Shown here piece after piece: positions 7,487 through 62,829 of a stretch of 64,000 nt of DNA. Where the stretch lies: assembly GCF_006345805.1 (NCBI RefSeq), contig NC_043017.1:24800001-24864000 (forward strand), read 5' to 3'. Numbering within the stretch: the stretch's first letter is position 1; each line of letters opens with the position of its first letter. The stretch comes from Octopus sinensis (lineage: Eukaryota). The position numbers and the translations under genes are program-made. Below the pieces are notes generated by a model that ran no database searches, was not told where the DNA came from, and was given only the letters and a program-made list of their open reading frames with translations.

Positions 7487-7700
7487 GTATGTATGTATGT
7501 GTGTGTGTTTGCCCCCCTAGCATTGCTTGACAACCGATGCTGGTGTGACTACGTCCCCGTCACTTAGCGGTTCGGCAAAAGAGACCGATAGAATAAGTAC
7601 TAGGCTTACAAAGAATAAGTCCCGGGGTCGATTTGCTCGATTAAAGGCGGTGCTCCAGCATGGCCGCAGTCAAATGACTGAAACAAGTAAAAGAGTAAAG
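7028..7700 (+). mobile_element. SINE B with an antisense SINE D (about 7187-7440) nested in its central linker
   Basis: SINE B head at 7028-7185 and tail at 7505-7700 are separated by a minus-strand SINE D and an (AT)n tract. Confidence 0.8.
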
Positions 7701-7724
7701 AGAGCCACAAGTATTAAATGACTA

Positions 7725-8254
<530 letters not shown>

Positions 8255-8279
<25 letters not shown>

Positions 8280-9879
8280 CCTGTATGAATATGTGTGTGT
8301 CTATTTAAGTTACTACTTTCAGAGAATGATTTACCACATATGTCACAGTGATATGGTTTCTCTCCTGTATGAATACGTTTGTGAGAATTTAAGATGCAAT
8401 TTTCAGAGAATGACCTACCACAGATATCACAGTGATATGGTTTTTCTCCTGTATGTACACGTTTGTGACTATTTAAATTACAACTCTTCGAAAATGATTT
8501 ACCGCAGATATCACAGTGATATGGTTTTTCTCCTGTATGTGTACGTTTGTGACTATTTAAATTACAACTCTGAGAAAATGACTCACCACAGATATCACAA
8601 TGATATGGCTTCTCTCCTGTATGAATACGTCTGTGCCTGTTTAAGGTACTACTTATAGAAAATGATTTACCACAGATATTACACTGATATGGCTTCTCTC
8701 CTATATGAACATATTTGTGTTTGGTTAAGGTACTATTTTCAGAGAACGATTGACCACAGATATCACAATGATATGGTCTCTCACCAGTGTGAACGCGTTT
8801 GTGAGTATTTAATTTACTACTTGTGGGAAAGGATTTACCACAGATATCACACTGATGTGGCTTTTCTCCTGTATGGATACGCATATGTGTAAGTAATGCA
8901 CTATTTCTTGAGAAACATTTACCACAGATATCACAGTGATATGGTGTCTCTCCTGTATGAACACGCTTATGCTTAGTTAAATCACTACCTTTAGAGAAAG
9001 ATTTACCACAGATATCACACTGATATGGCTTTTTCTCCTTATGGATACGCATATGTGTAAGTAATGCACTATTTCTTGAGAACATTTACCACAGATATCA
9101 CAGTGATATGGTGTCTCTCCTGTATGAACACGCTTATGCTTAGTTAAATCACTACCTTTAGAGAAAGATTTACCACAGATATCACACTGATGTGGCTTTT
9201 CTCCTGTATGGATACGCATATGTGTAAGTAATGCACTATTTCTTGAGAAACATTTACCACAGATATCACAGTGATATGGTGTCTCTCCTGTATGAACACG
9301 CTTATGCTTAGTTAAATCACTACCTTTAGAGAAAGATTTACCACAGATATCACACTGATATGGCTTTTCTCCTGTATGGATACGCATATGTGTAAGTAAT
9401 GCACTATTTCTTGAGAAACATTTACCACAGATATCACAGTGATATGGTGTCTCTCCTGTATGAACACGCTTATGCTTAGTTAAATCACTACCTTTAGAGA
9501 AAGATTTACCACAGATATCACACTGATATGGCTTTTCTCCTGTATGGATACGCATATGTGTAAGTAATGCACTATTTCTTGAGAAACATTTACCACAGAT
9601 ATCACAGTGATATGGTGTCTCTCCTGTATGAATACGTTTGTGTAAATTTAAGGTGCCACTTTTAGAGAATGATTTACTACAAATGTCACAATGATATAGT
9701 TTTCCTCCCGCGTGAATATGTTTGTGCTCAATTAAGCAACGTCTTTCTGAGAATGACTTTTTACACACGTTACAGAAATATGACGTTTTTTCTGTCTCTT
9801 TTCGCATCTCATCAGGAATATTAATACTCTCAGACTCTGTTTTGATTTGAATTGGATTCTTAGAGTATTCATTTTCCAT
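8255..9879 (-). CDS. C2H2 zinc-finger protein A, about 18 fingers, with an apparent 1-bp frameshift near 9081
   Basis: ORFs 8977-9879 and 8255-9085 overlap in different frames. Repeats are CxxCxxxFxxxxxLxxHxxxH with TGEKP linkers. The stop codon is supplied by SINE C. Confidence 0.85.
8860..9625 (-). repeat. Near-identical 168-bp (two-finger) tandem repeat, about 4.5 copies
   Basis: Finger helices alternate RNSALLT (x5) and KGSDLTK (x4), with near-identical DNA including synonymous sites. Confidence 0.95.
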
Positions 9880-30714: not shown

Positions 30715-31505
30715 ACTCTTTACTCTTTTACTTGTTTCAGTCATTACACTGCGGCCATGCTGGAGCACCGCATTTGGTTGAGCAAATCGACCGCAGGACT
30801 TATTCTTTGTAAGCCTAGCACTTATTCAATAGGTTTCTTTTGCCGAATCGTTAGGTTGCGGGGACGTAAACACACCAGCATCGGTTGTCAAGCGATGTTG
30901 GGGGGGGGGACAAACCCACACATATCTCTCTCTTTACTCTTTTACTTGTTTCAGTCATTTGACTGCGGCCATGCTGGAGCACCACCTTTAATCGAGCAAC
31001 TCGACACCAGAACTTATTCTTTTGTAAGCCCAGTACTTATTCTATCGGTCTCTTTTTGCCGAACCGCTAAGTAACGGGGACATAAACACACCAGCATCGG
31101 TTGTCAAGCAATGCTAGGGGGACAAACACAGACACACAAACACACACACGCATATATATACATATATACGACGGGCTTCTTTCAGTTTCCGTCTACCAAA
31201 TCCACTCACAAGGCTTTGGTCGGCCCGAGGCTATAGTAGATGACACTTGCCCAAGGTGCCACGCAGTGGGACTGAACCCTTAACCATGTGGTTGGTAAAC
31301 AAGCTACTTACCACACAGCCACTCCTATATACACATACATATACACGACGGGCTTCTTTTCAGTTTCTGTTTACCAAATCCACTCACAAGAATTTGGTCG
31401 GCCAGAGGCTTTAACAGAAGACCCGTGCCCAAGGTGTCAGGCAGTGGGACTTAACCCGGAACCATGTGGTTCGTAAGCAATCTACTTACCACTCAGCCAC
31501 TCCTA
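30715..31505 (-). mobile_element. Cluster of overlapping SINE B copies
   Basis: Two tail halves and two head halves in tandem. Confidence 0.8.
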
Positions 31506-42947: not shown

Positions 42948-44147
42948 TCAAAGAAACAACTTCTCTGCTCTATGGACATATTTGTGTCGAGATAAGTTCC
43001 TTCGTTGAGAGAACGATTCTCCACAGAGAACACAGTGATATGGTTTTTCACTTGTATGAGTACGTTTGTGTAGATTTAAGCTTGTATTCCTGGAGAATGA
43101 CTGACCACAGATATTACACTGATATGGCTTTTCTCCTGTATGGATACGCATATGTATAAGTAAGGCACTATTTCTTGAGAAACATTTACCACAGATATCA
43201 CAGTGATATGGTTTTTCTCCTGTATGAACACGCTTATGCTTAGTTAAATCACTACCTTTAGCGAAAGATTTACCACAGATATCACAGGGAAACGGTTTTT
43301 CTCCTGTATGAACTCGTTTATGGTGAATTAAGGTACTACCATCAGAAAATGATTTACCACAGATATCACAGTGATACGGTTTCTCTCCTGTATGAACACG
43401 CTTATGTTTAATTAAATCACTACTTTGAGAGCAAGTTTTACCACAGATATCACAGTGATATGGTTTTTCACCTGTATGAATCCGTATGTGCTTATTCAAG
43501 TCAACATTTTGACTGAATGATTTACCACAGGTATTACAGCTATAGGGTTTTTCTCCTGTATGAACATATATGTGTCTCCTTAATTTACTTTTATCCTTAA
43601 ATGATTTACCACAAATCTCACAGTGAAATGGTCTCTCACCTGAATGGACACCTCTGTGAGTACTTAAGGATGACATGTGAGAGAATGATTTACCGCAGAT
43701 ATCACAATGGTATGGTCTCTCTCCTGTATGAATACGTCTGTGACTTGTTAACATACCATTTGTAGTGAGTGATTTACCACAGATATCACATTGATATGGT
43801 TTCTCCCCTGTATGAAAACGTTTGTGATTATTTAAGTGACCAATCTGAGAGTAAGATTTACCACAAATATCACAATGGTATGGCTTATCTCCTGTATGAA
43901 TACGTTTGTGAGTAATTAAGGAACTACTTTTAGAAAATGATTTACCACAGATATCACAATGATATAGTTTCTCTCTGGTATGAAAAAATTTGTGATCAGT
44001 TAGGCGACTTTTCTGAGAGAACGACTTTTTACAGACATCACAGGAGTACAATCTTTTTTTTCTCTCATTCTGAATCTCATCAGGAAAATCAAGTCTGTCA
44101 CACTTTGTTTTAATTTCAATTGATTCCTCACAGAATTCATTTTCCAT
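42948..44147 (-). CDS. C2H2 zinc-finger protein F, 399 aa, 13 fingers
   Basis: Open ORF lacking only the last ancestral finger. Acceptor at 44507, uORF MDISLHL* at 44395-44418, exon-1 donor at 46410. Confidence 0.9.
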
Positions 44148-45050: not shown

Positions 45051-45539
45051 GGCGGAGGTAATGATCATGGACAGCACCCCCTTTGGGACTTTTTGGGGGT
45101 TTTACTTTTACATGAACACACTACATCGAGGGCAGAGATTCTGAATTTGCAAAAAAATCTGCATTTCAAAATTTAAATCCCCCACCTTCCCTAAATTTCT
45201 TAAATTTTCACTTTCTTAAAAAAAGTTTTTGGGTGATATACATATGCAAGAAATTAATGACCAAATATCTTACAAACTATAGAATTTTCTCAATAAAGCC
45301 AAGAGAAAATGATGTTTTATAAACACATTCTACCAGTATACGAAGTTTAAATTTTTTTAGTTACCTAGAAATTATGTTACAAACTGCCGTTCAAACCGAA
45401 AAGATCCGATTTAAATTTTGGAATGCAGATTTTCTTTTTGCAGATTCGGAATGTCCACTCTCGATATAGTGTGTTCATGTGGAAATAACCCCACCTCTAA
45501 ATCCCAAAGGATGTGCAATCTATGACCTTTACCTCCGCC
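45051..45539. mobile_element. MITE with ~130-bp imperfect TIRs, holding a GGATC-family right end
   Basis: Ends are GGCGGAGGTAA and TTACCTCCGCC, with an 8-bp TSD GAATACAG. The nested end aactgccgttcaaaccgaaaagatcc lies at about 45408. Confidence 0.85.
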
Positions 45540-46681
45540 GAATACAGGAAAGTGGTTTGAAAATTTGGGAGAAATAAGAAAAATTACGCGAGATTTTACG
45601 GGGGACTTAAAACCACAATTCCACCAACATTTGTTATTAAGATTACGTAAGAATCACACGTGAAGTTTATATATATAACTAGCTACAGCAACACTATTAT
45701 ATTATTTGTTAAACTATTAAATAGTGGACATGGGGCTTTCTGTTCAGAAATTCATGCGTAATTGAGACAGAGCAAAAAAATTCGTTGCTGACATACTAGA
45801 TCAGTTATTTCTCTTTAAAATTACACGTTATTCCACCTTTATTTCTTTTCTTTAAGGTTGTTTATAATTAAACACATTTAAGTTAGTATAATGTATTGTT
45901 CTATTCTCGTAATACACATGCTTTGGAATGGAAAATATTTCCTCATAGTATAAAGTATTTGGAAAACCTTTCCTTGTAGTATAAAGTATTTAATTTCCTT
46001 TTCAAAACATACGGAACAAAATTTTGCGATGTAACAATGTTAAAGAGTTAATTAATAATACTTCCACGGTAAAAGAATGTGCATTACGGGAGAGAAAAAA
46101 TACAATTTAGGAAACTTAGAAGTTATTAGTTAAATACAGACGTAGGGATAATAATATTAATTAATATTAATTGTAAAGTACAATAAGGTATAAGTGTCAT
46201 CAGAAATGATGGACTTCTTATGTTTGTAACCTCTACAATTTAACATTGGAAGTAAACTTTGATTTCACTATTTCATAACAATGCCATGCATTTATAGGTT
46301 CCTTACCATCTTCGAAATTACGCTGCAATTCTTTACGTTACACAAAATTCATATTAATGAAAATGAATAGAAAAAACGATCGAATAAAGGAAGTACATTA
46401 AGAAAAATACCTCTTATTACCTGTAATTAAGAAGTGAGTAACGCTCGTCATATGTATTGTTACTACATACTCATTCACTGAAGAATTCCTAAGCGGATTC
46501 TGACTGGCGATTGTCGATGCTAGGACTTAATAGTTGCTTTTTGAGTAAGAAGAGCCAGAGAGAAAGAATTTGCTCAGAAATAAAAGGGAGGGGAATTTTT
46601 CCTCGAGGGGAGAGAACTGCTCAGAGCTTATAATCTTTTACGCTTCTTAACCTCTTCTGTGTATTATCAGTTACCAAGGTA

Positions 46682-47170
46682 AGGCGGCGAACTGGCAGAC
46701 ACGTTAGCACGTCGGGCGAAATGTTTAGCGGTATTTCGTCTGCCGGTACGTTCTGAGTTCTAATTCCGCCGAGGTCGAGTTTGCCTTTCATCCTTTCGGG
46801 GTCGATAAATTAAGTGCCAGTTACGCACTGGGGTCGATGTAATCAACTTAATACCTATGTCTGTTCTTGTTTGTCCCCTCTATGTTTAGCCCCTTATGGG
46901 TAATAAAGAAATAGGTATTTCGTCTGCTGTTACGTTCTGAGTTCAAATTCCGCCGAGGTCGACTTTGCCTTTCATCCTTTTGGGGTCGATTAAATAAGTA
47001 CCAGTTACGCACTGGGGTCGATATATTCGACTTAATCCGTTTATCTGAACTTGTTTGTCCTCTCTTGTGGGTAGTAAAGAAATAGGTATTTCGTCTGCCG
47101 CTACGTTGTGAGTTCAAATTCCGCCGAGGTCGACTTTGCCTTTCATCCTTTCGAGATCAATAAATTAAGT
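46682..47170 (+). mobile_element. SINE A multimer (one full copy plus two 5'-truncated tandem copies)
   Basis: Copies restart at ggtatttcgtctgc near 46914 and 47085. Confidence 0.85.
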
Positions 47171-47332
47171 CCCATTTAAGGCGATGTTACGGTATAAAGT
47201 ACCGGTATTAATTTTACATTAAACAAAAATTCATTTATCCTAGAAAAGAAGGCATGCGTTGCATATAATACACACACAGATGAATGAACCCCATTCAGAT
47301 GTCAACAATACAGCCTCCACTATTATTGGTAA

Positions 47333-47352
47333 TGCGCATGTACAACCGGATG
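47333..47352 (+). promoter_or_regulatory. Candidate promoter motif of ZNF-H; exon-1 donor at 47520|47521
   Basis: TGCGCATGTACAACCGGATG. The donor reads tttatacgag|gtattttttc. Confidence 0.55.
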
Positions 47353-48670
47353 TCTAATCTAATATTGGCAATGGAATGTCTGCTAAACAATTTCGGCAGA
47401 AATCGTAATTTACTGACAGACAAGTACTCATGTTTATACAGTGCATTGTAGGACACATATGTGTTTACTAACAACGTAGATCACTATCAATGACTAAATA
47501 ATTACTGTGATTTATACGAGGTATTTTTTCTTAATGTTCTTTTCATTCATTCTTTTTCTTTTTTGTTTTCATTCATTCATGTTATCATTTCTGAAGAATT
47601 GCCGGCGTAATTTCGATGAGGCAACAAAAGTCGTTGGGTGGGCGGGATTTACACATTTGTAGTTATACCGATTCTTATATATTATTGTATCTTACAATTA
47701 ATATATTTTTGTCCTAGGTCTGTATTTAATTAATAACTTCTAAGTTACCTAAATTGTTTTTTTCTTCTTCCGTAATACACAGTCTTAAACATTGTTACAT
47801 TGCATAATTCTGTTCCCTATGTTTTGAGAAGGAAATACAATACTGTTTACTACGAGAAAATAGTTTCCATTCCAAAACATGCATTACGAATATAGACCAG
47901 TACATTATACTAACTTAAATGTGTTTAATTATAAACAGTATTAAATAAAAATGAAGATGGAATAACGTGTAATATTTAAGAGAAATAATGGATCATGTAT
48001 ATCTGCAACAATGTTGGGTAAATTTATAGTTTCACATTAGATTCAATGTTCTGCTCAGTCAGAATTGATCTAGGGTCAAACAGTAATCGATCGCCGATGA
48101 ATGATCGGTTAATATATAGTTTAACACCCAGTCACCAAAACAAAAAGAACCCATCTAATAGGTGTAAAAAAAATTTAATATTCATTTTCTACACTTTTTT
48201 TTACACCTATTTGTGTTTGTCCCCCTAGCATTGCTTGACAACCGATGCTGGTGTGTTTATGTCCCCGTCACTTAGCGGTTCGGCAAAAGAGACCGATAGA
48301 ATAAGTACTGGGCTTACAAAGAATAAGTCCCGGGGTCGAGTTGCTCGACTAAATGCAGTGCTCCAGCATAGCCGCAGTCAAATGACTGAAGCAAGTAAAA
48401 GGGTAAAGAGAGTAAATGTTTATATTTACAGTTTACCAATATTGAAATGTAGTGAATTTTCCATCATTGAATCTACTTTTAAGTATCTCCTGTATCTTAT
48501 ACTGTTTCTCTATTATTTCAGAAAAATATCAGATAACATTGGTATAAAAGTATTTCTTCAGATGCATCATCAATATTTATCATCTTTCAAAGGAAGTTGT
48601 TACACAGGATGAATATAATCCTGTTTATAAATTTGTGATGGAATTAGTGTGAAATGTTGTGACCTGAGAC

Positions 48671-51181
48671 TAGGGGTTGTAAAAAATTAATTGCACTATA
48701 TTGGTCCAGTTATTTGATTGGAGTCATATTGCCAATTAAATAATTGATTGCTATCATATCAATTAATTGCAATATTGTCATCGAAAAAATTTTTTAAATG
48801 GCTCATACTCCATTCGACGTTCAATTATTATTGGAAGTATTGTGTTGACTGCTGAGAATGATCCACACATTCTGTCACGCTTAAGAATTGACTATTATGT
48901 CTGTTGTCAAGTGTTGATGCTTGATTCGGACTGCTGAGAATGATACACATTCTATTGTGCTTCGGAATTGGCTATTGTGTATGTTGTCAAATAATTGCTG
49001 TCAAGTGTTGACTCTTGTTTAGGACTGCCGAGAACAATTCACACATTCTGTCATGTTTGGGAATTGGTTGTTGTCAAATAATCACTGTTGAGTGATTCTT
49101 GGTTCTGATTGTCAAGAACGATTCACACATTCCGTCTTCAAGTCATTAAATCGTAACTTCGTCTGCATCGCAGTTTATATCTTGAATTTCACTCCAATAT
49201 ATTAACTGAATCAGACTTTCATCAATGGTGTGGTGAAATATCTTCTATTTTAAACTGTAGCGAAACATCTTCTATTTTAAACTAACCCATGCCGCGTGAA
49301 AATGAGCAAATCGTCAGAAAATATTTTAACCAAACAGACAGTGAACATGTATGGAAATGCAAGTGTGGAAAAAAGTTGACCCAGAAAAAAGGAACTGGAT
49401 GGACAAACCTTATGAATCATATAAAAAACCAGCACCCAGAGTATTCTACTACACAAGCTACTGGACAACCGTCTTCATCGAGTTTTCTTTCACCAAGAAG
49501 TAGTTTGGTCAGTCGCTCGGCTTTAAATTTTTATGGTTGGATTGAGTGGGTTTGTGTTGGTTTAAAACCATTTTCCTTTACTGAAGACCCACTGACTCAT
49601 AAGTACACAAACTTGGGAAGTATAACAAATGTGGCCTTAAAGAAATACATGGAGAAACTTACTCAAGAAGTGGAAAAGAAAATATCTGATGAACTTCCAA
49701 GTAAATTTTTGTTGGTAATCGATGGCTGGACTAAGGGCTCGACGCATTTCATTGGACTTTTTGCATCGTATTCGTGCAATTATCAAAATGACTATTGTAC
49801 TGTTTTGCTAGCATTTTCACCAATGGTAAGTGAAACATCAATCACTGCTTCTGATTATGTCGAATTTATAGAGTATGTGTTAAGTGTCTATAACAAAAAT
49901 TTAGAAAATGTTGTAGCTATTACAGGCGATAACACCGAAGTGAATAAATCTATAGCAAATCTGTGTAGAATACCATTGATTGGATGTGCCTTTCATAAAT
50001 TCAATCTAGCTGTTTCTGCTTATCTTGACAAGCAGGAAGTTCTGCTTAATAAAATTAATACGTTGATGGGCAAGCTAAAGTCATTAAAACTGGCAGGTAA
50101 ACTTCGGGAAAAAACGCCTTTGCAACCTATACAAAGAAATAAAACCCGTTGGACCACTACTTATGACATGATTGAAAGGTACATCCAACTCAAGCCGTTT
50201 TTAGATCCTTTTCAAGACGATCCAAAGCTGGTCGATTATCTGTTGACTCAACTCGATCATAATGATCTGCAGACTCTAAAAGACAATTTAGGAAAGTTAC
50301 GCTCAGTAACAATTGCCTTGCAAAGAACAGAATTAGATTTGGGAGATGCTCGAATTCTTTTTGACGAAATTCTTGCATTGTATCCTTACGAGGAGTTTAA
50401 AGAATATTTGCTTCCATCGGCAGCAATTGTGCACAGCCCAAATTTTGAAAGTGGAGCTGTGAAAATTTTACAACATGCAGAAGCAGAGCTAACTGCGGAT
50501 GAAGTGGCTGCTCTCCATCAGCTGAAAGTGGTGACGGATACATCACAACAGTCTGATTTACCTGTAGAAGATGATGATTTTGCTTCAATTTGTTTGAAAA
50601 AACAAAAGAAAAATAAAATTTCACCTCAGCAGTACCTGAACTGTAGATTTTTGTTACCAACATCCAACATCTTGGAACGTTTCTTCAGCTCAGCAGGTTA
50701 CGCTTTTAATGATTTTTGGCAATACTTAACACCGATGAATTTAGAAATGCAATTATTTCTAAAAGTCAATCGCGCTTTCTGGGATGAAGACCTAGTTTCA
50801 GAAATCTGCAATCGTTCATGACATTTTGCTATATTAGAAAATTCTAATTGTGCTACTCTTTTGAGAGACTCTTTCAATTAAAGACCTTCAATTTGTTTTA
50901 CAACCACTGTACAATGTAGAGTATACATGTTGCTTGTTCCCCTATACCAAATCAAGAAAATTGAACTTTGAACATTTTCTGATAATAAAGTTTTTTAAAA
51001 CTATAAGATGTGTCTTTATTTTCCTGTAATTTTGGCTCTTATCTAAATCGAAGCTAACTCTACAAAATATATGGTGTTTTTATGCTGGCTAAGGCTAATT
51101 GACAATTCATTGCAATAATTGATTGGCCTGTATCCAAATTGATTGATTGGAAAGGTTCCAATCAATTATTTACAACCCCTG
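48671..51181 (+). mobile_element. Full-length hAT DNA transposon, 2511 bp
   Basis: TIRs TAGGGGTTGTAAAAAATTAATTG and (reverse complement) CAGGGGTTGTAAATAATTGATTG. 8-bp TSD CCTGAGAC at 48663-48670 and 51182-51189. The paralogous G leader has one copy (gtgacctgagaccattag, about 54195). Confidence 0.95.
49289..50821 (+). CDS. hAT transposase, 510 aa, apparently intact
   Basis: N-terminal BED-like CxC...HxxxxH; catalytic D (IDGWT), D (TGDN), CxxH (CAFH), RW (KTRW) and E (PTSNILERFFS). Confidence 0.92.
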   Translation: MPRENEQIVRKYFNQTDSEHVWKCKCGKKLTQKKGTGWTNLMNHIKNQHPEYSTTQATGQPSSSSFLSPRSSLVSRSALNFYGWIEWVCVGLKPFSFTEDPLTHKYTNLGSITNVALKKYMEKLTQEVEKKISDELPSKFLLVIDGWTKGSTHFIGLFASYSCNYQNDYCTVLLAFSPMVSETSITASDYVEFIEYVLSVYNKNLENVVAITGDNTEVNKSIANLCRIPLIGCAFHKFNLAVSAYLDKQEVLLNKINTLMGKLKSLKLAGKLREKTPLQPIQRNKTRWTTTYDMIERYIQLKPFLDPFQDDPKLVDYLLTQLDHNDLQTLKDNLGKLRSVTIALQRTELDLGDARILFDEILALYPYEEFKEYLLPSAAIVHSPNFESGAVKILQHAEAELTADEVAALHQLKVVTDTSQQSDLPVEDDDFASICLKKQKKNKISPQQYLNCRFLLPTSNILERFFSSAGYAFNDFWQYLTPMNLEMQLFLKVNRAFWDEDLVSEICNRS

Positions 51182-51389
51182 CCTGAGACCATTAGCAAAA
51201 TTCTCCTACATCCCTGTCAGGAATATATTTGCAAGTTGGTGGTTAAATTTTCACAAGAGGTTATGAAAAATGAATTCTGTGAGAAGTCAATTCAAATTAA
51301 AACAGAGACTGAAAGAGCCCGTACACTCAGACATACACGAATGAGACACACCCTCATGTGAACACGACAGCTTCCACTGACATTCATAA

Positions 51390-54157: not shown

Positions 54158-54392
54158 ATTTGTGATGGAATTGGTGTGAAATATTGTTGTTGTGACCTGA
54201 GACCATTAGTAAAATTCTTCTACATCCCTGCTAGGAATATGTTTGCCAGTTGGTTGTTTTGTTATTAAACACAGAGATGTTTTCACAAGAGATTGCAGTA
54301 TCTTCAGACACCAACAAAGATCACGTTCTATGGAATTGTAGCAGTTGAAATAATTGTTAAGAAAATACAAGAAGAAACGAGGAGGAATAATT

Positions 54393-56417
54393 ATGGAAAA
54401 GGAATTCTGTGAGAAGCCAATTCAAATTAAAACAGAGATTGAAAGCATTGATTTTGCTGATGAGATGCTGAAAGAGATAAAAGAAGGATCATGTTCCCCT
54501 GATATCTATACAGAGTCATTCTCTCAAAAACGTAACCCAACTGATCCCAAATATATTCATACCAGAGGGAAACCATATAATTGTGACATCTGTGGCAAAT
54601 CATTCTCTAAAAATAGTAACTTAAATACTCACAAACGTATTCATACAGGAGAGAAACCATTTCATTGTAATATCTGTGGTAAATCATTCTCTACAAGTGG
54701 TAACTTAACTAGTCACAAACGTATTCATACGGGAGAGAAACCACATCACTGTGATATCTGTGGTAAATCCTTTTCTGAAAGAGGTACCTTAAATAGTCAC
54801 AAACGTATCCATACAGGAGAGAAACCATACTCCTGTGGTACCTGTGGAAAATCATTCTCCGAAAGAGGTACCTTAAATACTCACAAGCATATTCATACAA
54901 GAGAGAAACCACATCACTGTGATATCTGTGGTAAATCATTTTTTAACATCGGTGCCTTAAATACCCATACACGTATTCATACAGGAGACAAGCCATATTA
55001 TTGTGATATCTGTGGTAAATCATTTTCTAGAAGTGATACTTTGAATACTCACAAATCTGTTCATGCTGGACAGAAACCATACCCGTGTGATATCTGTGGT
55101 AAATCCTTCTCTCACACATCGTCCCTAACTAAACACAGAAGTATCCACACAGGGGAGAGACCGTACCATTGTCAGATTTGTGGTAAATCATTCCCAGATA
55201 AAAGCAAATTACAGAGACACATATATGTCCATACAGGAGAAAAACCCTATGGCTGTAATATCTGTGGCAAATCATTCAGTCAAAATGTTGACTTAAATAA
55301 GCACATACGGATTCACACAGGGGAAAAGCCATATCACTGTGATATCTGTGGTAAATCTTGCTCTACAAGCAGTGACTTAATTAAACATAAGCGTGTTCAT
55401 ACAGGAGAAAAGCCATATCACTGTGATATCTGTGGCAAGTCTTTCTCGGAAGGCAGTGCTTTACATAAACATAGGCGTATACATACAGGAGAGACACCAT
55501 ATCACTGTCATGTTTGCGGTAAATCATTTTCTGATGGTAGTACCTTAACTAAGCACAAAAATATTCATACAGGGGAAAAACCATATCAGTGTGATATCTG
55601 TGGTAAATCATTTTCTAAAAGCCATACCTTAACTAAGCATAAACGTATCCATACAGGAGAAAAACCATATCAATGTGATATCTGTGGTCAGTCTTTCTCC
55701 AGGAATGGCTATTTAGCTAAACACAAACACACTCATATTGGTGAGAAAACATATCACTGTGTTATTTGTGGGAAATCATTCTCTCAAAGTAATGACTTAT
55801 CCAAACACAAACGCACTCATACAGGTGAACGACCATATCATTGTGCTATCTGTGGAAAATCTTTCTCTCAAAGTAACGACTTATACAGACACAAACGCAC
55901 TCATACAGGTGACAAGCCATATCAGTGTGACATCTGTGAGAAAGCATTCTCTACCAATAGATACTTAACTAAACATAAATATATTCATGCAGGAGAGGGA
56001 CCGGATGTCCATGATATTTATAGTGAATCATTCTCTTCTGGTGAAGCTTCAATTATTCACAAACCCAATCCTGCAGCTGAGGAGACGTATCAGTGTGATA
56101 TCTGCGGTAAATCATTTTCTCAACAATATTTAACTATACACAAACGCACTCATACAGGTGAGAAGCCATATCTCTGTGTCATCTGTGGGAAATCTTTCTC
56201 TCAAAATGTTCACTTAACTCTACACAAACGCACTCATACAGGTGAGAAGCCACATCACTGTGACATTTGTGGAAGATCATTCTCTCAGATAAGTACCTTG
56301 TCTAATCACAAATATGTTCACAGAGCAGAAAAACTGTACCTCTGTGATATTTGTGGCAAATCATTCTCTAGAAAGTTTGAATTAACTAGACACAAACGTC
56401 TTCATATACAGGAGTGA
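54393..56417 (+). CDS. C2H2 zinc-finger protein G, 674 aa, about 21 canonical plus 2 degenerate fingers; the only full-length copy
   Basis: Uninterrupted ORF from aattATGG, homologous to the paralog starts. It ends HKRLHIQE*. Confidence 0.93.
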
Positions 56418-58911: not shown

Positions 58912-59300
58912 CTCTCTCTTTTACTCTTTTACTTGTTTCAGTCATTTGACTGTGGTCATGCTGGAGCACCGCCTTTAGTCGAGCAAATCGACCCCGGCAC
59001 TTATTCTTTGTAAGCCCAGTACTTATTCTATCAGTCTCTTTTGCCGAACCGCTAAGTGACGGGAACGTAAACACACCAGCATCGTTTGTCAAGCAATGCT
59101 AGGGGGACAAACACAGACACACAAACATATACATATATACGACAGGCTTCTTTCAGTTTCCGTCTACCAAATCCACTCACAAGGCATTGGTTGGCCCGAA
59201 GCTATAGTAGAAGACACTTGCCCAAGGTGCCACACAGTGGGACTGAACCCGGAACCATGTGGTTGGCAAGCAAGCTACTTACCACACAGCCACTCCTGCG
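58912..59300 (-). mobile_element. SINE family B
   Basis: Family consensus. Confidence 0.85.
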
Positions 59301-60130: not shown

Positions 60131-60137
60131 GAGATAT

Positions 60138-60929
60138 TACTCTTTTACTTATTTCAGTCATTTGACTGCGGCCATGCTGGAGCACCTCCTTTAGTCGAGC
60201 AAATCGACCCCGGGACTTATTCTTTGTAAGCCCAGTACTTATTCTATCGGTCTCTTTTGCCGAACCGCTAAGTGACGGGGACATAAACACACCAGCATCG
60301 GTTGTCAAGCAATGCTAGGGGGACAAACGCGCACATATATATACATATATATGACAGGCTTCTTTCAGTTTCCGTCTACCAAATCCACTCACAAGGCAAT
60401 TGTCGGCCCGGGGCTATAGCAGAAGACACTTGCCCAAGATGTCATACAGGGGGACTGAACCCAGAACCATGTGGTTGGTTAGCAAGCTACTTACCACACA
60501 ACCACTCCTGCGCCTATTAGATATTAGATACTTTTTGTTACCCTTTCTGTAAGTTATCAAGTTAGTGCCATGAGTGAACCACAATTGAAATATGCAATTT
60601 ACGTGTGTACACTTAACTCATTAGCTTGCTGGAAATCACACCACTAAGTCAGAAAATCATCTCAAACACACACAATCTACATCATTTGAAATGTAGTGTG
60701 GTAAGAAGCTTCCTTTCCAACCAGAAATAACTGGTCTAAGGGAGATACACTGACCCCGGACTTTTTATTTTTTGGTGATCTCTGACCAAATGACCTTAAC
60801 GGATTTCTGCCTCTCAGAGGTGTAGAGTTACATTTGTTTTTGGGTTTAGAATCCGACAAAATGTCTGCGAGGCTAAGGCTTTTGTGGATGCGGAACCATT
60901 GGTCATTCTACGACTGGTCATTAACTTCA

Positions 60930-60971
<42 letters not shown>

Positions 60972-62165
60972 ATATATTAGGCACAAGAGTGGCTGTGTGG
61001 TAAGTAGCTTGTTTACCAACTGCATAGTACTGGGTTCAGTCCCACTATGTGGCACCTTGGGCAAGTGTCTTCTACTATAGTCTTGGGCCGACCAAAGCCT
61101 TGTAAGTAAATTTGGTAGACAGAAACTGAAAGAAGCCCGTCATATATATATATATGTATGTATATGTTTGTGTGTCTGTGTTTGTCCCCCCCCCCCCAAC
61201 ATCGCTTGACAACCGATGCTGGTGTGTTTGTGTCCCCGTAACTTAGCAGTTCAGCAAAAGAGACAGCTAGAATAAGTACTAGGCTTACAAAGAATAAGCC
61301 CTAAGGTTGATTTGCTCAACTAAAGGAGGTGCTCCAGCATGGCCACAGTCAAATGACTTAAACAAATAAAAGAATATATATATATATATATATATATATA
61401 AACATACAATGGGTTTTTTTCAGTTTCTGTCTACCAAATCTACTCAAAGCTTTGGTTGGCCCAAGGCTTTAGTAAAAGACACTTGCTCAAGGTGCCACAC
61501 AGTGGGACTGAACTTGGAACCATGTGGTTGGGAAGCAAACTTCTTACCACACAGAGTACTTTTCAAATGGTGTAGATTAAAATCATATGGGAAATACACG
61601 AGGAAAAAATAAGACTACGTGGGTGTGCATTCATACATACTGACATACATCACAACTGTCTTCAACATTTCAAGTTTCATTTTGTAGCTATATCAGTGAC
61701 GTGTTACTATACATGTGTGCATGTCCAATTATTATTATTTTTTTTTTCACATAAGCGCAGGAGTGGCTGTGTGGTAAGTAGCTTGTTTACCAACCACATG
61801 GTTCCGGGTTCAGTCCCACTGCGTGGCACCTTGGGCAAGTGTCTTCTACTATAGCCTTGGGCCAACCAAAACCTCGTGAGTGTATTTGGTAGATGGAAAC
61901 TGAAAGAAGCCTGTCATATATATGAATATATATATATATATATGCATGTGTGTGTTTCTGTGTCTGTGTTTGTCCCCCTAGCATTGCTTGACAACCGATG
62001 CTGGTGTGTTTATGTCTCCGTTACTTAGCGGTTCGGCAAAAGAGACCGATAGAATAAGTACTGGGCTTACAAAAGAATAAGTCCCGGGGTCGAGTTGCTC
62101 GATTGTAGGCGGTGCTCCAGCATGGCCGCAGTCAAATGACTGAAACAAGTAAAAGAGTAAAGAGT
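60138..62165. mobile_element. Four SINE B copies in alternating orientation
   Basis: About 60138-60512 (-), 60983-61375 (+), 61405-61552 (-) and 61757-62165 (+). Confidence 0.85.
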
Positions 62166-62829
62166 ATTAAATTCCGATATAATCATAATTTACACTATCT
62201 GAAGTGAATTAGTTGAAAATTTCAGATGCACTGGAACAGCCATTCTGACTCACAGGGCTCACACATGCAGCCATTTCCACCCTGATAGTGGCGAGCAGGG
62301 ATATAGTATGGGGTCCAAGAACATGCCATACATAATTAAACGGAAGCTTCTCAAACAACCACAGACATACTTCAATGGGAGCAAATGACGTAAGCCATGT
62401 TTGGGAGAGAGAGCATGAATCCTACAGTATTTCTTGATTAAATTCGTCCCTTTCTTAAATGAATTTGTCTTTTTCTCAAATGAATTCGTCGCTTTGATAT
62501 CAAAGCCAATTTAGATCTTAAATATTTAAAAAATTAGACATCTATAAGTTTAAACCAACATACAAAATAATATCTTAACATGACAATAGTGAAAATAAAC
62601 AAAAAACTAAACTTAAAATGATTTATATTTATTTTAAAACTCTTGTAATCATAGATATTTCACAAATCCATATTCAATGCTTTTGGGATGAAAAATGTTT
62701 AATGCTGATCATATCTTGCACCATTTACAGCAGCTGTTGAATCCATTGCAAGATACATTGCTGTTTTTAAAATATTCATTCTAGAATTGTCATGGGCAAA
62801 TTTTCTGGTCTGTTGTAGAGATCATTTTT

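What the first reader, a model, noticed from the sequence alone, without database searches (positions are those of the whole stretch)
47333..51189. Intact hAT transposase trapped in sense orientation downstream of a ZNF promoter and first exon
Seen: the element lies inside the leader exon of the fingerless paralog H, proven by the TSD and the empty site in G. It retains all catalytic motifs in a window where every other TE ORF is ruined. A candidate acceptor (tcttctattttaaactgtag|, 49260) sits 28 nt before the transposase ATG. Inference: ZNF exon 1 (donor 47520) spliced to 49261 would give a clean transposase mRNA under ZNF-cluster control. That could be an early domestication step or a local source of rearrangement. 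Caveat: unspliced read-through crosses many upstream ATGs, and intact TIRs also fit a merely young insertion.
Basis: partly seen in the sequence, partly recalled or inferred. Interest (0 to 1): 0.72.

Follow-up and report, generated by a model that had tools for sequence, protein, structure and literature searches.

The report
Octopus hAT transposase kept by selection
A jumping-gene (hAT) insertion inside a truncated zinc-finger gene of Octopus sinensis is real, is shared with Octopus vulgaris, and its transposase gene has been protected from mutation as strongly as a neighbouring host gene, so it looks like a transposase being adopted by the host rather than a young insertion; the proposed splice to the zinc-finger promoter is untested.

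Summary
The window is Octopus sinensis (GCA_006345805.1, CM016879.1). The hAT element is real, but it spans 48671-51181 (2511 bp), not 47333-51189. It has a perfect 8-bp TSD (CCTGAGAC), 23-nt TIRs matching at 20 of 23, and an empty paralogous site at 54196-54203. It lies 149 nt into exon 2 (5'UTR) of a truncated ZNF duplicate "H", in sense orientation.

The 510-aa ORF (49289-50821) is a BED-finger hAT transposase. Its profile and predicted fold match Hermes. D145, D214, E463, CxxH and RW are present.

O. vulgaris carries the same insertion at the same locus. Between the two species the ORF has 21 synonymous and 8 non-synonymous changes (omega about 0.10) and no indels. Neutral decay would give about 54 non-synonymous changes and about 10 indels. 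Non-coding parts of the element and its flanks diverge neutrally (4.9%). A paralogous copy elsewhere is dead. O. vulgaris has also lost about 16 nt of the left TIR.

This is a fixed, selectively maintained transposase gene, that is, a domestication candidate. It is annotated only as uncharacterized LOC118767407.

The proposed 47520-to-49261 splice cannot be tested here. That acceptor is one of 14 comparable AG sites.

The parts
47332..47352 (+). Promoter-type motif of ZNF paralog H (ATGCGCATGTACAACCGGATG). It is shared with G (51389) and with two minus-strand paralogs.
   Evidence: 4 matches in the window, 0 expected by chance. Identical in O. vulgaris.
47353..47520 (+). Putative non-coding exon 1 of H, ending at the donor ACGAG|GTATTT (47520|47521). 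The transcription start is unknown. The stretch contains 5 ATGs.
   Evidence: the donor 19-mer recurs at 5 paralogs, 0.03 expected. Conserved in O. vulgaris. ATG count.
47521..48521 (+). H intron 1. It contains a SINE-like repeat at 48212-48412 and ends at the conserved acceptor CTGTTTCTCTATTATTTCAG|.
   Evidence: the acceptor 22-mer occurs at 7 ZNF paralogs, 0 expected. Paralog alignment. Repeat copies.
48522..48670 (+). 5'UTR part of H exon 2 upstream of the insertion. Its last 8 nt (48663-48670, CCTGAGAC) are the left copy of the TSD.
48671..51181 (+). The hAT element proper (2511 bp), present once in the window.
   Evidence: TIR, TSD and empty site. No other copy in the window.
48671..48693 (+). 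Left TIR, TAGGGGTTGTAAAAAATTAATTG. Position 1 is T here, whereas the right TIR and the paralog L003 have C. About 16 nt of this TIR and 5 nt of the TSD are deleted in O. vulgaris.
48833..49136 (+). Four tandem copies of an 82-94-nt repeat in the element's 5' non-coding region. O. vulgaris has three. This may be a promoter or enhancer region (inference).
   Evidence: families D1, D3; 84-nt gap in O. vulgaris.
49229..49282 (+). A 27-nt direct repeat, two copies. The AG is derived: the first unit and the dead paralog L003 have GG.
   Evidence: (D10). Conserved in O. vulgaris. It is 1 of 14 comparable sites.
49289..50821 (+). Transposase ORF, 510 aa. BED zinc finger at aa 11-50. Catalytic residues D145 (49721-49723), D214 (49928-49930) and E463 (50675-50677). 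C233xxH236 and R287-W288 are present. Derived substitutions F235 (49991-49993) and W477 (50717-50719).
   Evidence: Purifying selection shown.
50984..50989 (+). AATAAA poly(A)-signal candidate in the element's 3' non-coding region. ATTAAA also occurs at 50877.
   Evidence: Sequence match only.
51159..51181 (-). Right TIR (reverse complement CAGGGGTTGTAAATAATTGATTG). It is intact in O. vulgaris, where it is part of a 140-nt x4 tandem array.
51182..51361 (+). Right TSD copy (51182-51189), followed by the remnant of H exon 2. The remnant holds a 32-codon ORF, MKNEFCEKSIQIKTETERA... (51263-51361), which ends in G's upstream region.
54196..54203 (+). Empty target site (CCTGAGAC) in the 5'UTR of the intact paralog G. 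G's CDS is 54393-56417.

Best explanation
An Ac-clade, BED-finger hAT transposon of a compact family inserted into the 5'UTR part of exon 2 of a truncated C2H2-ZNF duplicate (H). Elements of this family are 1.9-2.5 kb, have the TIR CAGGGG[T/C]TGT..AAAAATTAATT and AATTAATTGCA subterminal repeats, and encode a transposase of about 505-520 aa. The insertion happened after the H/G duplication and before O. sinensis and O. vulgaris split, and it became fixed.

Since then the transposase ORF at this one locus has been held under host-level purifying selection. That selection is about as strong as on the neighbouring functional ZNF gene G. Meanwhile the element's ends and non-coding parts drift. So this is a transposase on the way to being, or already, a host gene (molecular domestication, ZBED-like). 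It is not a merely young or free-living copy.

Shown: the insertion anatomy, the orthology with O. vulgaris, the selection signature, the hAT fold and the catalytic residues.

Inferred: the protein is expressed, most simply from the element's own 5' region, and read-through from the H promoter is possible. It acts through its BED finger and RNase-H-like core, either as a DNA-binding regulator or as a nuclease. S235F and R477W may have attenuated transposition.
For: - Anatomy: TSD, TIRs and empty site.
- Orthologous filled site in O. vulgaris between the same two ZNF genes.
- ORF, O. sinensis versus O. vulgaris: 29 differences, 21 synonymous and 8 non-synonymous. dS 0.068, dN 0.0067, omega 0.098.
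- Neutral yardstick from 7859 aligned non-coding nt: p = 0.049 and 6.6 indel events per kb. That predicts about 75 substitutions (54 non-synonymous or stop) and about 10 indels in the ORF. P(at most 8 non-synonymous of 29) = 6e-7. P(no indel) = 4e-5.
- Neighbour gene G has omega 0.058 and dS 0.075.
- Non-coding parts of the element diverge at 3.7-4.5%, like the flanks.
- Internal control: the paralogous copy L003 on another O. vulgaris chromosome has three frame changes. Its branch shows 54 non-synonymous to 11 synonymous changes, against 8:20 on the two terminal branches of the ZNF-locus copy (Fisher P = 7e-7).
- O. vulgaris has lost about 21 nt covering part of the TSD and the first 16 nt of the left TIR, yet its branch still shows 4 non-synonymous to 13 synonymous.
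- The 90% protein cluster holds exactly one intact 510-aa member each from O. sinensis, O. vulgaris and O. bimaculoides. Differences are 8, 18 and 18, fitting the species tree.
- hAT identity: family profile versus Hermes E = 1.7e-8. AF2 model pLDDT 84. Foldseek top 12 hits are all Hermes, best E = 6.5e-11, TM about 0.57. zf-BED found by Pfam.
Against: - There is no expression or functional evidence of any kind. No transcript contig carrying the ORF was found.
- Both TIRs and a perfect TSD survive in O. sinensis, so that copy could still be mobile.
- Only two species could be compared at the DNA level, with 29 substitutions in all.
- Orthology of the O. bimaculoides protein could not be tested because its DNA is not on record. 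Published split times are 2.5 and 34 Mya (PMC10700109). These would predict a far larger difference than the observed 18 versus 8 residues. Either the dates, the rate constancy or the orthology is off.
- The O. vulgaris TIR deletion rests on one assembly.
- No whole-genome copy census was possible. Other intact copies that could act as gene-conversion donors are not formally excluded.
Confidence: 0.72

Rival explanations
1. The transposase is expressed as a chimeric mRNA from the H promoter: ZNF exon 1 (donor 47520) spliced to an acceptor at 49260/49261 inside the element. This puts a clean transposase ORF under ZNF-cluster control. It can coexist with the domestication reading as the way the gene is expressed.
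For: - H keeps the cluster's promoter motif, donor and acceptor, all identical in O. vulgaris.
- H has no ZNF body left, so the transposase is the only long ORF in the H transcription unit.
- The orientation is sense.
- The AG at 49259-49260 is derived relative to the dead paralog and to the adjacent repeat unit, and both species share it.
- There is no ATG between 49261 and the start codon.
- An AATAAA follows the ORF.
Against: - The acceptor is one of 14 crude pyrimidine-rich AG sites in 47521-49288. Its tract is interrupted by AAA.
- The strong, paralog-conserved acceptor at 48521 would normally be used. That would give a leader with 4 + 8 upstream ATGs.
- The putative exon 1 itself holds 5 ATGs.
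- The H promoter and exon 1 diverge at 4.0% between species, near neutral, against 1.9% for G's.
- The 147 nt just upstream of the ATG is the most diverged part of the element, at 8.8%.
- hAT elements normally carry their own promoter in such a 5' region (general knowledge).
- An in-frame TAA lies upstream of the ATG, so no fusion protein is possible.
Confidence: 0.15
2. It is simply an autonomous hAT copy that is still active or was active recently. The intact ORF reflects youth or TE-level selection, not host function.
For: - O. sinensis has intact TIRs (20 of 23 matching) and a perfect TSD.
- The catalytic triad is intact.
- The family has been mobile in octopods. L003 is a second insertion with its own TIRs. 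L005 carries several copies. Two relative clusters have 20-31 members.
Against: - The insertion is fixed at the same site in two species whose neutral divergence here is 4.9%. At that age a neutral ORF should carry about 54 non-synonymous or stop changes and about 10 indels. It carries 8 and 0.
- Selection for transposition does not act on a copy sitting at a fixed orthologous locus (established population-genetic reasoning).
- The left TIR is lost in O. vulgaris.
- The only other copy found in these genomes is dead.
Confidence: 0.1
3. The low dN/dS is an artefact of gene conversion from other, selected copies, or of assembly or annotation error. It would then not reflect selection at this locus.
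For: No whole-genome census could be run. TE copies can exchange sequence.
Against: - dS in the ORF (0.068) equals the local neutral level, and G has 0.075. The element's non-coding parts are as diverged as the flanks. Recent conversion would erase synonymous and non-coding divergence too.
- Protein databases show only one intact copy per species.
- Sequencing errors would push omega towards 1 and add frameshifts, not remove them.
Confidence: 0.03

Closest known systems
Hermes / Ac-type hAT transposons (Hermes transposase, PDB 2BW3, 4D1Q, 8EDG)
   Same: 8-bp TSD and short TIRs starting YAGGG, as in Ac. BED finger, then an RNase-H-like DDE core with an inserted helical domain, then a C-terminal SER.FS...R..L block. 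D145, D214 and E463 align to the Hermes motif blocks that hold its catalytic triad (D180, D248, E572 from memory of the literature). CxxH and RW are conserved.
   Different: Only 13-15% identical to Hermes. Shorter (510 aa). Pfam's hAT dimerisation model does not reach threshold. The copy is fixed and selectively maintained at one locus rather than multi-copy. The superfamily-conserved Arg of the C-terminal block is Trp (R477W).
Domesticated hAT transposases: vertebrate ZBED genes and plant DAYSLEEPER/SLEEPER
   Same: BED-finger hAT-derived ORF, single copy. Syntenic across species and under purifying selection. Relatives hit Pfam PF27039 'ZBED1_RNase-like_helical'.
   Different: Those genes have long lost TIRs and TSD, are ancient, and usually have mutated catalytic residues. 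Here TIRs and TSD are still intact in one species, the triad is intact, and the age is only somewhat older than the sinensis/vulgaris split. No function or expression is known.
Kat1 and alpha3 of Kluyveromyces lactis (domesticated hAT and MULE transposases that still cut at TIR-like ends)
   Same: A host-retained transposase with preserved catalytic residues, coexisting with recognisable element ends (Kat1: PMC4763223, listed; alpha3 from my own knowledge).
   Different: In yeast the cleavage has a demonstrated role in mating-type switching. Nothing of the kind is shown here.
Host-transposase fusion genes formed by exon capture (Cosby et al. 2021, from my own knowledge)
   Same: A DNA transposon lies in sense orientation inside a host transcription-factor gene, downstream of a host splice donor.
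   Different: No protein fusion is possible. H exon 1 is non-coding, and an in-frame TAA precedes the transposase ATG. Only a promoter or UTR swap is conceivable.

Membership tests
hAT superfamily DNA transposon | 8-bp target-site duplication | tested here: met
   CCTGAGAC at 48663-48670 and 51182-51189. A single copy lies at the empty paralogous site 54196.
hAT superfamily DNA transposon | Short terminal inverted repeats beginning YAG/YARNG | tested here: met
   TAGGGGTTGTAAA... and CAGGGGTTGTAAA..., 20 of 23 matching. The same TIR is found in L003 and, slightly diverged, in the 49%-identical relative L007.
hAT superfamily DNA transposon | DDE RNase-H-like transposase with CxxH and RW motifs, homologous to Hermes/Ac | tested here: met
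   Family profile versus Hermes E = 1.7e-8, with the motif blocks aligned. Foldseek top 12 hits are all Hermes. D145, D214, E463, C233, H236 and W288 are present.
hAT superfamily DNA transposon | C-terminal hAT dimerisation domain (Pfam PF05699) | tested here: inconclusive
   The query has no Pfam hit, and only 3 of 20 relatives hit weakly (best E = 0.0016). The block LPTSNILERFFS...LEMQLFLKVN aligns to the Hermes C-terminus (stretch 4). The conserved Arg is replaced by Trp.
hAT superfamily DNA transposon | N-terminal BED zinc finger | tested here: met
   PF02892, E = 3e-5, 24.4 bits against a cut-off of 20.6, aa 11-50.
Domesticated (exapted) transposase gene | Same (syntenic) locus in different species | tested here: met
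   O. vulgaris OX597834.1 carries it between the same 399-aa and 674-aa ZNF genes, with the same right junction. O. bimaculoides could not be tested.
Domesticated (exapted) transposase gene | Purifying selection between orthologous copies (dN/dS well below 1, no disabling mutations) | tested here: met
   omega 0.098, P = 6e-7, and 0 indels where about 10 are expected. The dead paralog gives a neutral pattern.
Domesticated (exapted) transposase gene | Loss of mobility (TIRs degraded, single copy) | tested here: inconclusive
   The left TIR is deleted in O. vulgaris, but both TIRs are intact in O. sinensis. Only one intact copy per species appears in protein databases. No genome-wide DNA census was possible.
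Domesticated (exapted) transposase gene | Expression and a host function | not testable with these tools
   No transcript data were reachable. No paper mentions LOC118767407 or LOC106880990.
Host-transposase fusion gene (exon capture) | Host coding exon spliced in frame to the transposase ORF | tested here: not met
   H exon 1 is a non-coding leader, because the ZNF ATG lies in exon 2. An in-frame TAA sits 6 nt upstream of the transposase ATG.

The most novel reading that the evidence does not exclude
This is a transposase caught midway through domestication. The same orthologous gene is still flanked by usable TIRs and TSD in O. sinensis, so it could in principle excise itself. In O. vulgaris it is already immobilised by loss of the left TIR. 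In both species it is under host-level constraint as strong as a neighbouring ZNF gene, and the catalytic triad is intact. It may be a new cephalopod BED-finger regulator or nuclease sitting in, and possibly transcribed from, the expanding C2H2-ZNF cluster. If the O. bimaculoides gene is at the same locus, it has been retained for tens of millions of years.
Probability: 0.35. Interest if true: 0.75.

Novelty: new member of a known kind. Interest (0 to 1): 0.58.

Why it matters
Domesticated hAT/ZBED genes are well known in vertebrates and plants. They are nearly always seen long after the event, when element ends and often the catalytic residues are gone. Here the ends, the target-site duplication and an empty paralogous site are all still readable, and a sister species shows the next step, loss of one end. 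The order of events in transposase domestication can therefore be read directly and tested.

The gene sits in the lineage-specific C2H2-ZNF expansion that is a hallmark of octopus genomes. This gives a concrete locus at which to ask whether ZNF-cluster promoters supply expression to captured genes.

Databases list the gene only as an 'uncharacterized protein'. No paper naming it was found.

Tried and rejected
1. A single-sequence search of the transposase against PDB found nothing. A family profile was needed.
2. Pfam gives only zf-BED for the query.
3. DNA for the O. bimaculoides protein P0039 is not on record, so its synteny and dN/dS could not be tested.
4. I tried to calibrate bimaculoides versus sinensis divergence with the neighbouring ZNF G. 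The hit list was swamped by unrelated poly-ZNF proteins and listed no octopus orthologue, so that search was wasted.
5. A profile search for named relatives added only one distant unnamed hAT. The family has no curated name in the sources searched.
6. I looked for the same flanks around the 71%-identical gene on L005 to test deeper orthology. No flank similarity was found. That copy has degenerate TIRs and a D145E change, and its species is unknown.
7. The 1879-nt Logan contig L006 might have been a transcript revealing a spliced leader. It starts in subterminal AATTAATTGCA repeats and carries the ORF without introns, so it reveals no spliced leader; whether it is genomic or a transcript cannot be told.
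8. A search for MITE relatives with the same TIR in the window found none.
9. TRF finds no tandem array in window 47-52 kb at default score, because the 82-94-nt repeats are too diverged.
10. Literature searches found no report of this gene.


Full report
**Source and setting**

The exact 510-aa product of the ORF is encoded on Octopus sinensis GCA_006345805.1, CM016879.1. Window position 45289 corresponds to record position 24845289. The window is 37.5% G+C and is a C2H2 zinc-finger (ZNF) cluster. ZNF ORFs lie on the minus strand between 8 and 44 kb, and one lies on the plus strand at 54354-56417 (paralog G). The hAT ORF is the only long non-ZNF ORF.

**Observation check: the element**

The mobile element proper is 48671-51181 (2511 bp).
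- It is bounded by TAGGGGTTGTAAAAAATTAATTG on the left. The reverse complement of the right end is CAGGGGTTGTAAATAATTGATTG, matching at 20 of 23.
- It is flanked by an exact 8-bp duplication, CCTGAGAC.
- That 8-mer occurs only three times in 64 kb: at the two junctions and at 54196-54203 in paralog G.
- Joining the H flanks aligns colinearly with G across that point, which makes it a clean empty site.

It is the promoter-type motif of the host ZNF paralog H.

**Observation check: the host gene**

Three short sequences define the cluster's gene architecture, and all three recur far above chance.
- A promoter-type motif, ATGCGCATGTRCAACCGGATG: 4 sites, 0 expected.
- An exon-1 donor, TGATTTATACGAG|GTATTT: 5 sites.
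- An acceptor, CTGTTTCTCTATTATTTCAG|AA: 7 sites, one upstream of each ZNF coding exon.

H has all three, at 47332, 47520|47521 and 48521|48522. The insertion is therefore 149 nt into exon 2, in the 5'UTR, on the same strand as H. After the element, H continues with its start codon and 32 codons (51263-51361). It then runs into G's upstream region (D2).

**The protein**

- Pfam reports only the BED finger, aa 11-50.
- A profile of 20 family members matches Hermes transposase at E = 1.7e-8. IDGWT, GDN, CxxH, TRW and LERFFS align to the Hermes motif blocks that hold its D180, D248, C265/H268, W319 and E572 (Hermes residue numbers recalled from the literature, not read from the tool).
- An AlphaFold model (pLDDT 84, pTM 0.74) has Hermes structures as its 12 best PDB matches. 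The best has E = 6.5e-11 and TM about 0.57. P-element transposase comes next.
- D145, D214 and E463 are present.

Relatives of 45-50% identity from unnamed eukaryotic contigs are also about 505-520 aa. Some of their clusters have 20-31 near-identical members. One relative, L007, has TIRs CAGGGGCTGTCAAAAATTAATT and AATTAATTGCA subterminal repeats like those at 48685 and 48761. This is a genuine, compact hAT family with Ac-like termini.

**Comparison with O. vulgaris**

O. vulgaris (GCA_951406725.2, OX597834.1; locus L002) has the element at the same place. It lies between the orthologues of the 399-aa and 674-aa ZNF genes and has the same right junction. The insertion therefore predates the species split.

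I used 7859 aligned non-coding positions around and inside the element as a neutral yardstick. The two species differ at 4.9% of these sites and by 52 indel events, or 6.6 per kb.

| Measure in the 1533-nt ORF | Expected if neutral | Observed |
|---|---|---|
| Substitutions | about 75 | 29 |
| Non-synonymous or stop changes | about 54 (about 3 stops) | 8, no stops |
| Synonymous changes | about 21 | 21 |
| Indel events | about 10 | 0 |

- Nei-Gojobori gives dS 0.068, dN 0.0067 and omega 0.098.
- With the local mutation spectrum, P(at most 8 non-synonymous of 29) = 6e-7 and P(no indel) = 4e-5.
- Synonymous divergence equals the neutral level, so the ORF has not been homogenised recently.
- The element's 5' and 3' non-coding parts diverge at 4.5% and 3.7%, like the flanks, and differ by a whole 84-nt repeat unit.
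- The functional neighbour G gives omega 0.058 with dS 0.075. The transposase ORF is thus constrained about as strongly as a host gene.

**Internal control**

A second copy lies on another O. vulgaris chromosome (L003). It is 88.5% identical, has its own TIRs and carries three frame changes. I used the 82%-identical gene on L006 as outgroup.
- The L003 branch carries 54 non-synonymous and 11 synonymous changes, a neutral pattern.
- The two terminal branches of the ZNF-locus copy carry 8 and 20.
- Fisher P = 7e-7.

**Decay of the ends**

- In O. vulgaris about 21 nt are missing at the left junction. This removes 5 nt of the TSD and the first 16 nt of the left TIR.
- In O. vulgaris the right TIR end, the TSD and the H remnant have been amplified into a 140-nt x4 tandem array, 97% matching.
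- In O. sinensis the first base of the left TIR is T, where the right TIR and L003 have C.

The ORF is conserved while the transposition machinery in cis is eroding. This is the classical signature of domestication.

**Derived changes in the protein**

The proteins of O. sinensis, O. vulgaris and O. bimaculoides form one 90% cluster with one intact 510-aa member each. They differ at 8 (S-V), 18 (S-B) and 18 (V-B) residues. The eight S-V differences polarise 4:4 against O. bimaculoides.

All three share derived residues at positions that are nearly invariant in the rest of the family. These include S235F, inside CxxH, and R477W. R477W replaces the Arg of the C-terminal hAT block, which aligns to an Arg of Hermes ...EKRNRI. 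The dead paralog L003 still has S and R at these positions. Whether these changes weaken transposition is inference only.

**Limits on the O. bimaculoides evidence**

Its DNA is not on record, so synteny is untested. Published split times are 2.5 Mya (sinensis/vulgaris) and 34 Mya (bimaculoides) (PMC10700109). These fit poorly with the 18:8 residue ratio. Either the dates, the rate constancy or the orthology is off. An attempt to calibrate with the neighbouring ZNF failed.

**The splice hypothesis**

The sequence tcttctattttaaactgtag| does end at 49260. No ATG lies between it and the start codon, and it is identical in O. vulgaris. The AG is derived: the adjacent 27-nt repeat unit and L003 have GG.

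Several points count against reading much into it.
- It is one of 14 AG sites with at least 12 of 18 upstream pyrimidines between 47521 and 49288.
- The strong canonical acceptor at 48521 lies upstream of it.
- The putative exon 1 has five ATGs.
- H's promoter and exon 1 evolve at 4.0% between species, against 1.9% for G's.
- The 147 nt before the ATG is the most diverged stretch of the element, at 8.8%.
- A 618-nt 5' region with tandem repeats is what a hAT with its own promoter looks like (general knowledge).
- An in-frame TAA precedes the ATG, so no ZNF-transposase fusion protein can form.

No transcript evidence could be reached, so the mechanism stays open and, in my estimate, unlikely (about 0.15).

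**Verdict**

The 'merely young insertion' alternative is rejected. 'Early domestication' is supported by orthology, omega of about 0.1, absence of indels, neutral decay of everything but the ORF, and loss of a TIR in the sister species. The proposed ZNF-promoter splice is unproven.

The closest known cases are ZBED and SLEEPER-type domesticated hAT transposases. Kat1-like cases, where a retained transposase coexists with element ends, are also close. The unusual point is the intermediate state.

The gene is listed only as uncharacterized (LOC118767407; LOC106880990 in O. bimaculoides), and no paper naming it was found. A survey of transposon-derived transcription factors mentions two truncated O. 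bimaculoides ZBED genes that lack a transposase domain. That description does not fit this gene (PMC10027918).

Noticed in passing
L002 9861-10418 (O. vulgaris; corresponds to window 51153-51278): O. vulgaris carries a 140-nt x4 tandem array (97% matching). Its unit is the last 28 nt of the hAT right end, the TSD and the H exon-2 remnant up to H's start codon. O. sinensis has one unit. It could be replication slippage or a by-product of aberrant cleavage and repair at the right TIR.
   Followed up: partly
window 48212-48412, with about 12 more copies (e.g. 7504-7704, 30928-31130, 58914-59115, 60137-60328, 61965-62172): A SINE-like repeat of about 200 bp, with copies 84-96% identical and scattered through the ZNF cluster on both strands. 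One copy lies in H's intron. O. vulgaris has an extra 342 nt next to it.
   Followed up: no
window 46730-47178: Tandemly arranged units of about 90-190 nt containing a tRNA-like B-box (GAGTTCAAATTCCGCCGAGGTCGAC). Further copies lie at about 2137, 14905, 19770 and 58380. This is probably a tRNA-derived SINE family.
   Followed up: no
window 48157-48211: A perfect 17-nt inverted repeat (AATAGGTGTAAAAAAAA / TTTTTTTTACACCTATT) separated by 21 nt, just upstream of the SINE-like repeat in H's intron. It may be a tiny MITE-like palindrome.
   Followed up: no
window 8255-9879 (minus strand): This ZNF paralog is split into two overlapping ORFs (8977-9879 and 8255-9085), which suggests a frameshift. It also contains near-perfect internal repeats of a two-finger unit, suggesting recent intragenic duplication.
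   Followed up: no
L005 9128-11945 (ENA ERZ25067582, species unknown): A 71%-identical 512-aa gene (P0003) has an intact ORF but clearly degenerate TIRs, and Glu in place of the first catalytic Asp (IERWT). Better-preserved ends of the same family lie on the same contig. This may be a second, independent case of a retained but immobile copy.
   Followed up: partly
window 47674-48015 vs 45777-46165 (minus strand): Part of H's intron is homologous, in inverted orientation, to sequence upstream of the minus-strand 399-aa ZNF (42948-44147). The cluster therefore switches orientation head-to-head around 46-47 kb. No promoter motif or donor for the 399-aa gene was found by the pattern searches.
   Followed up: no
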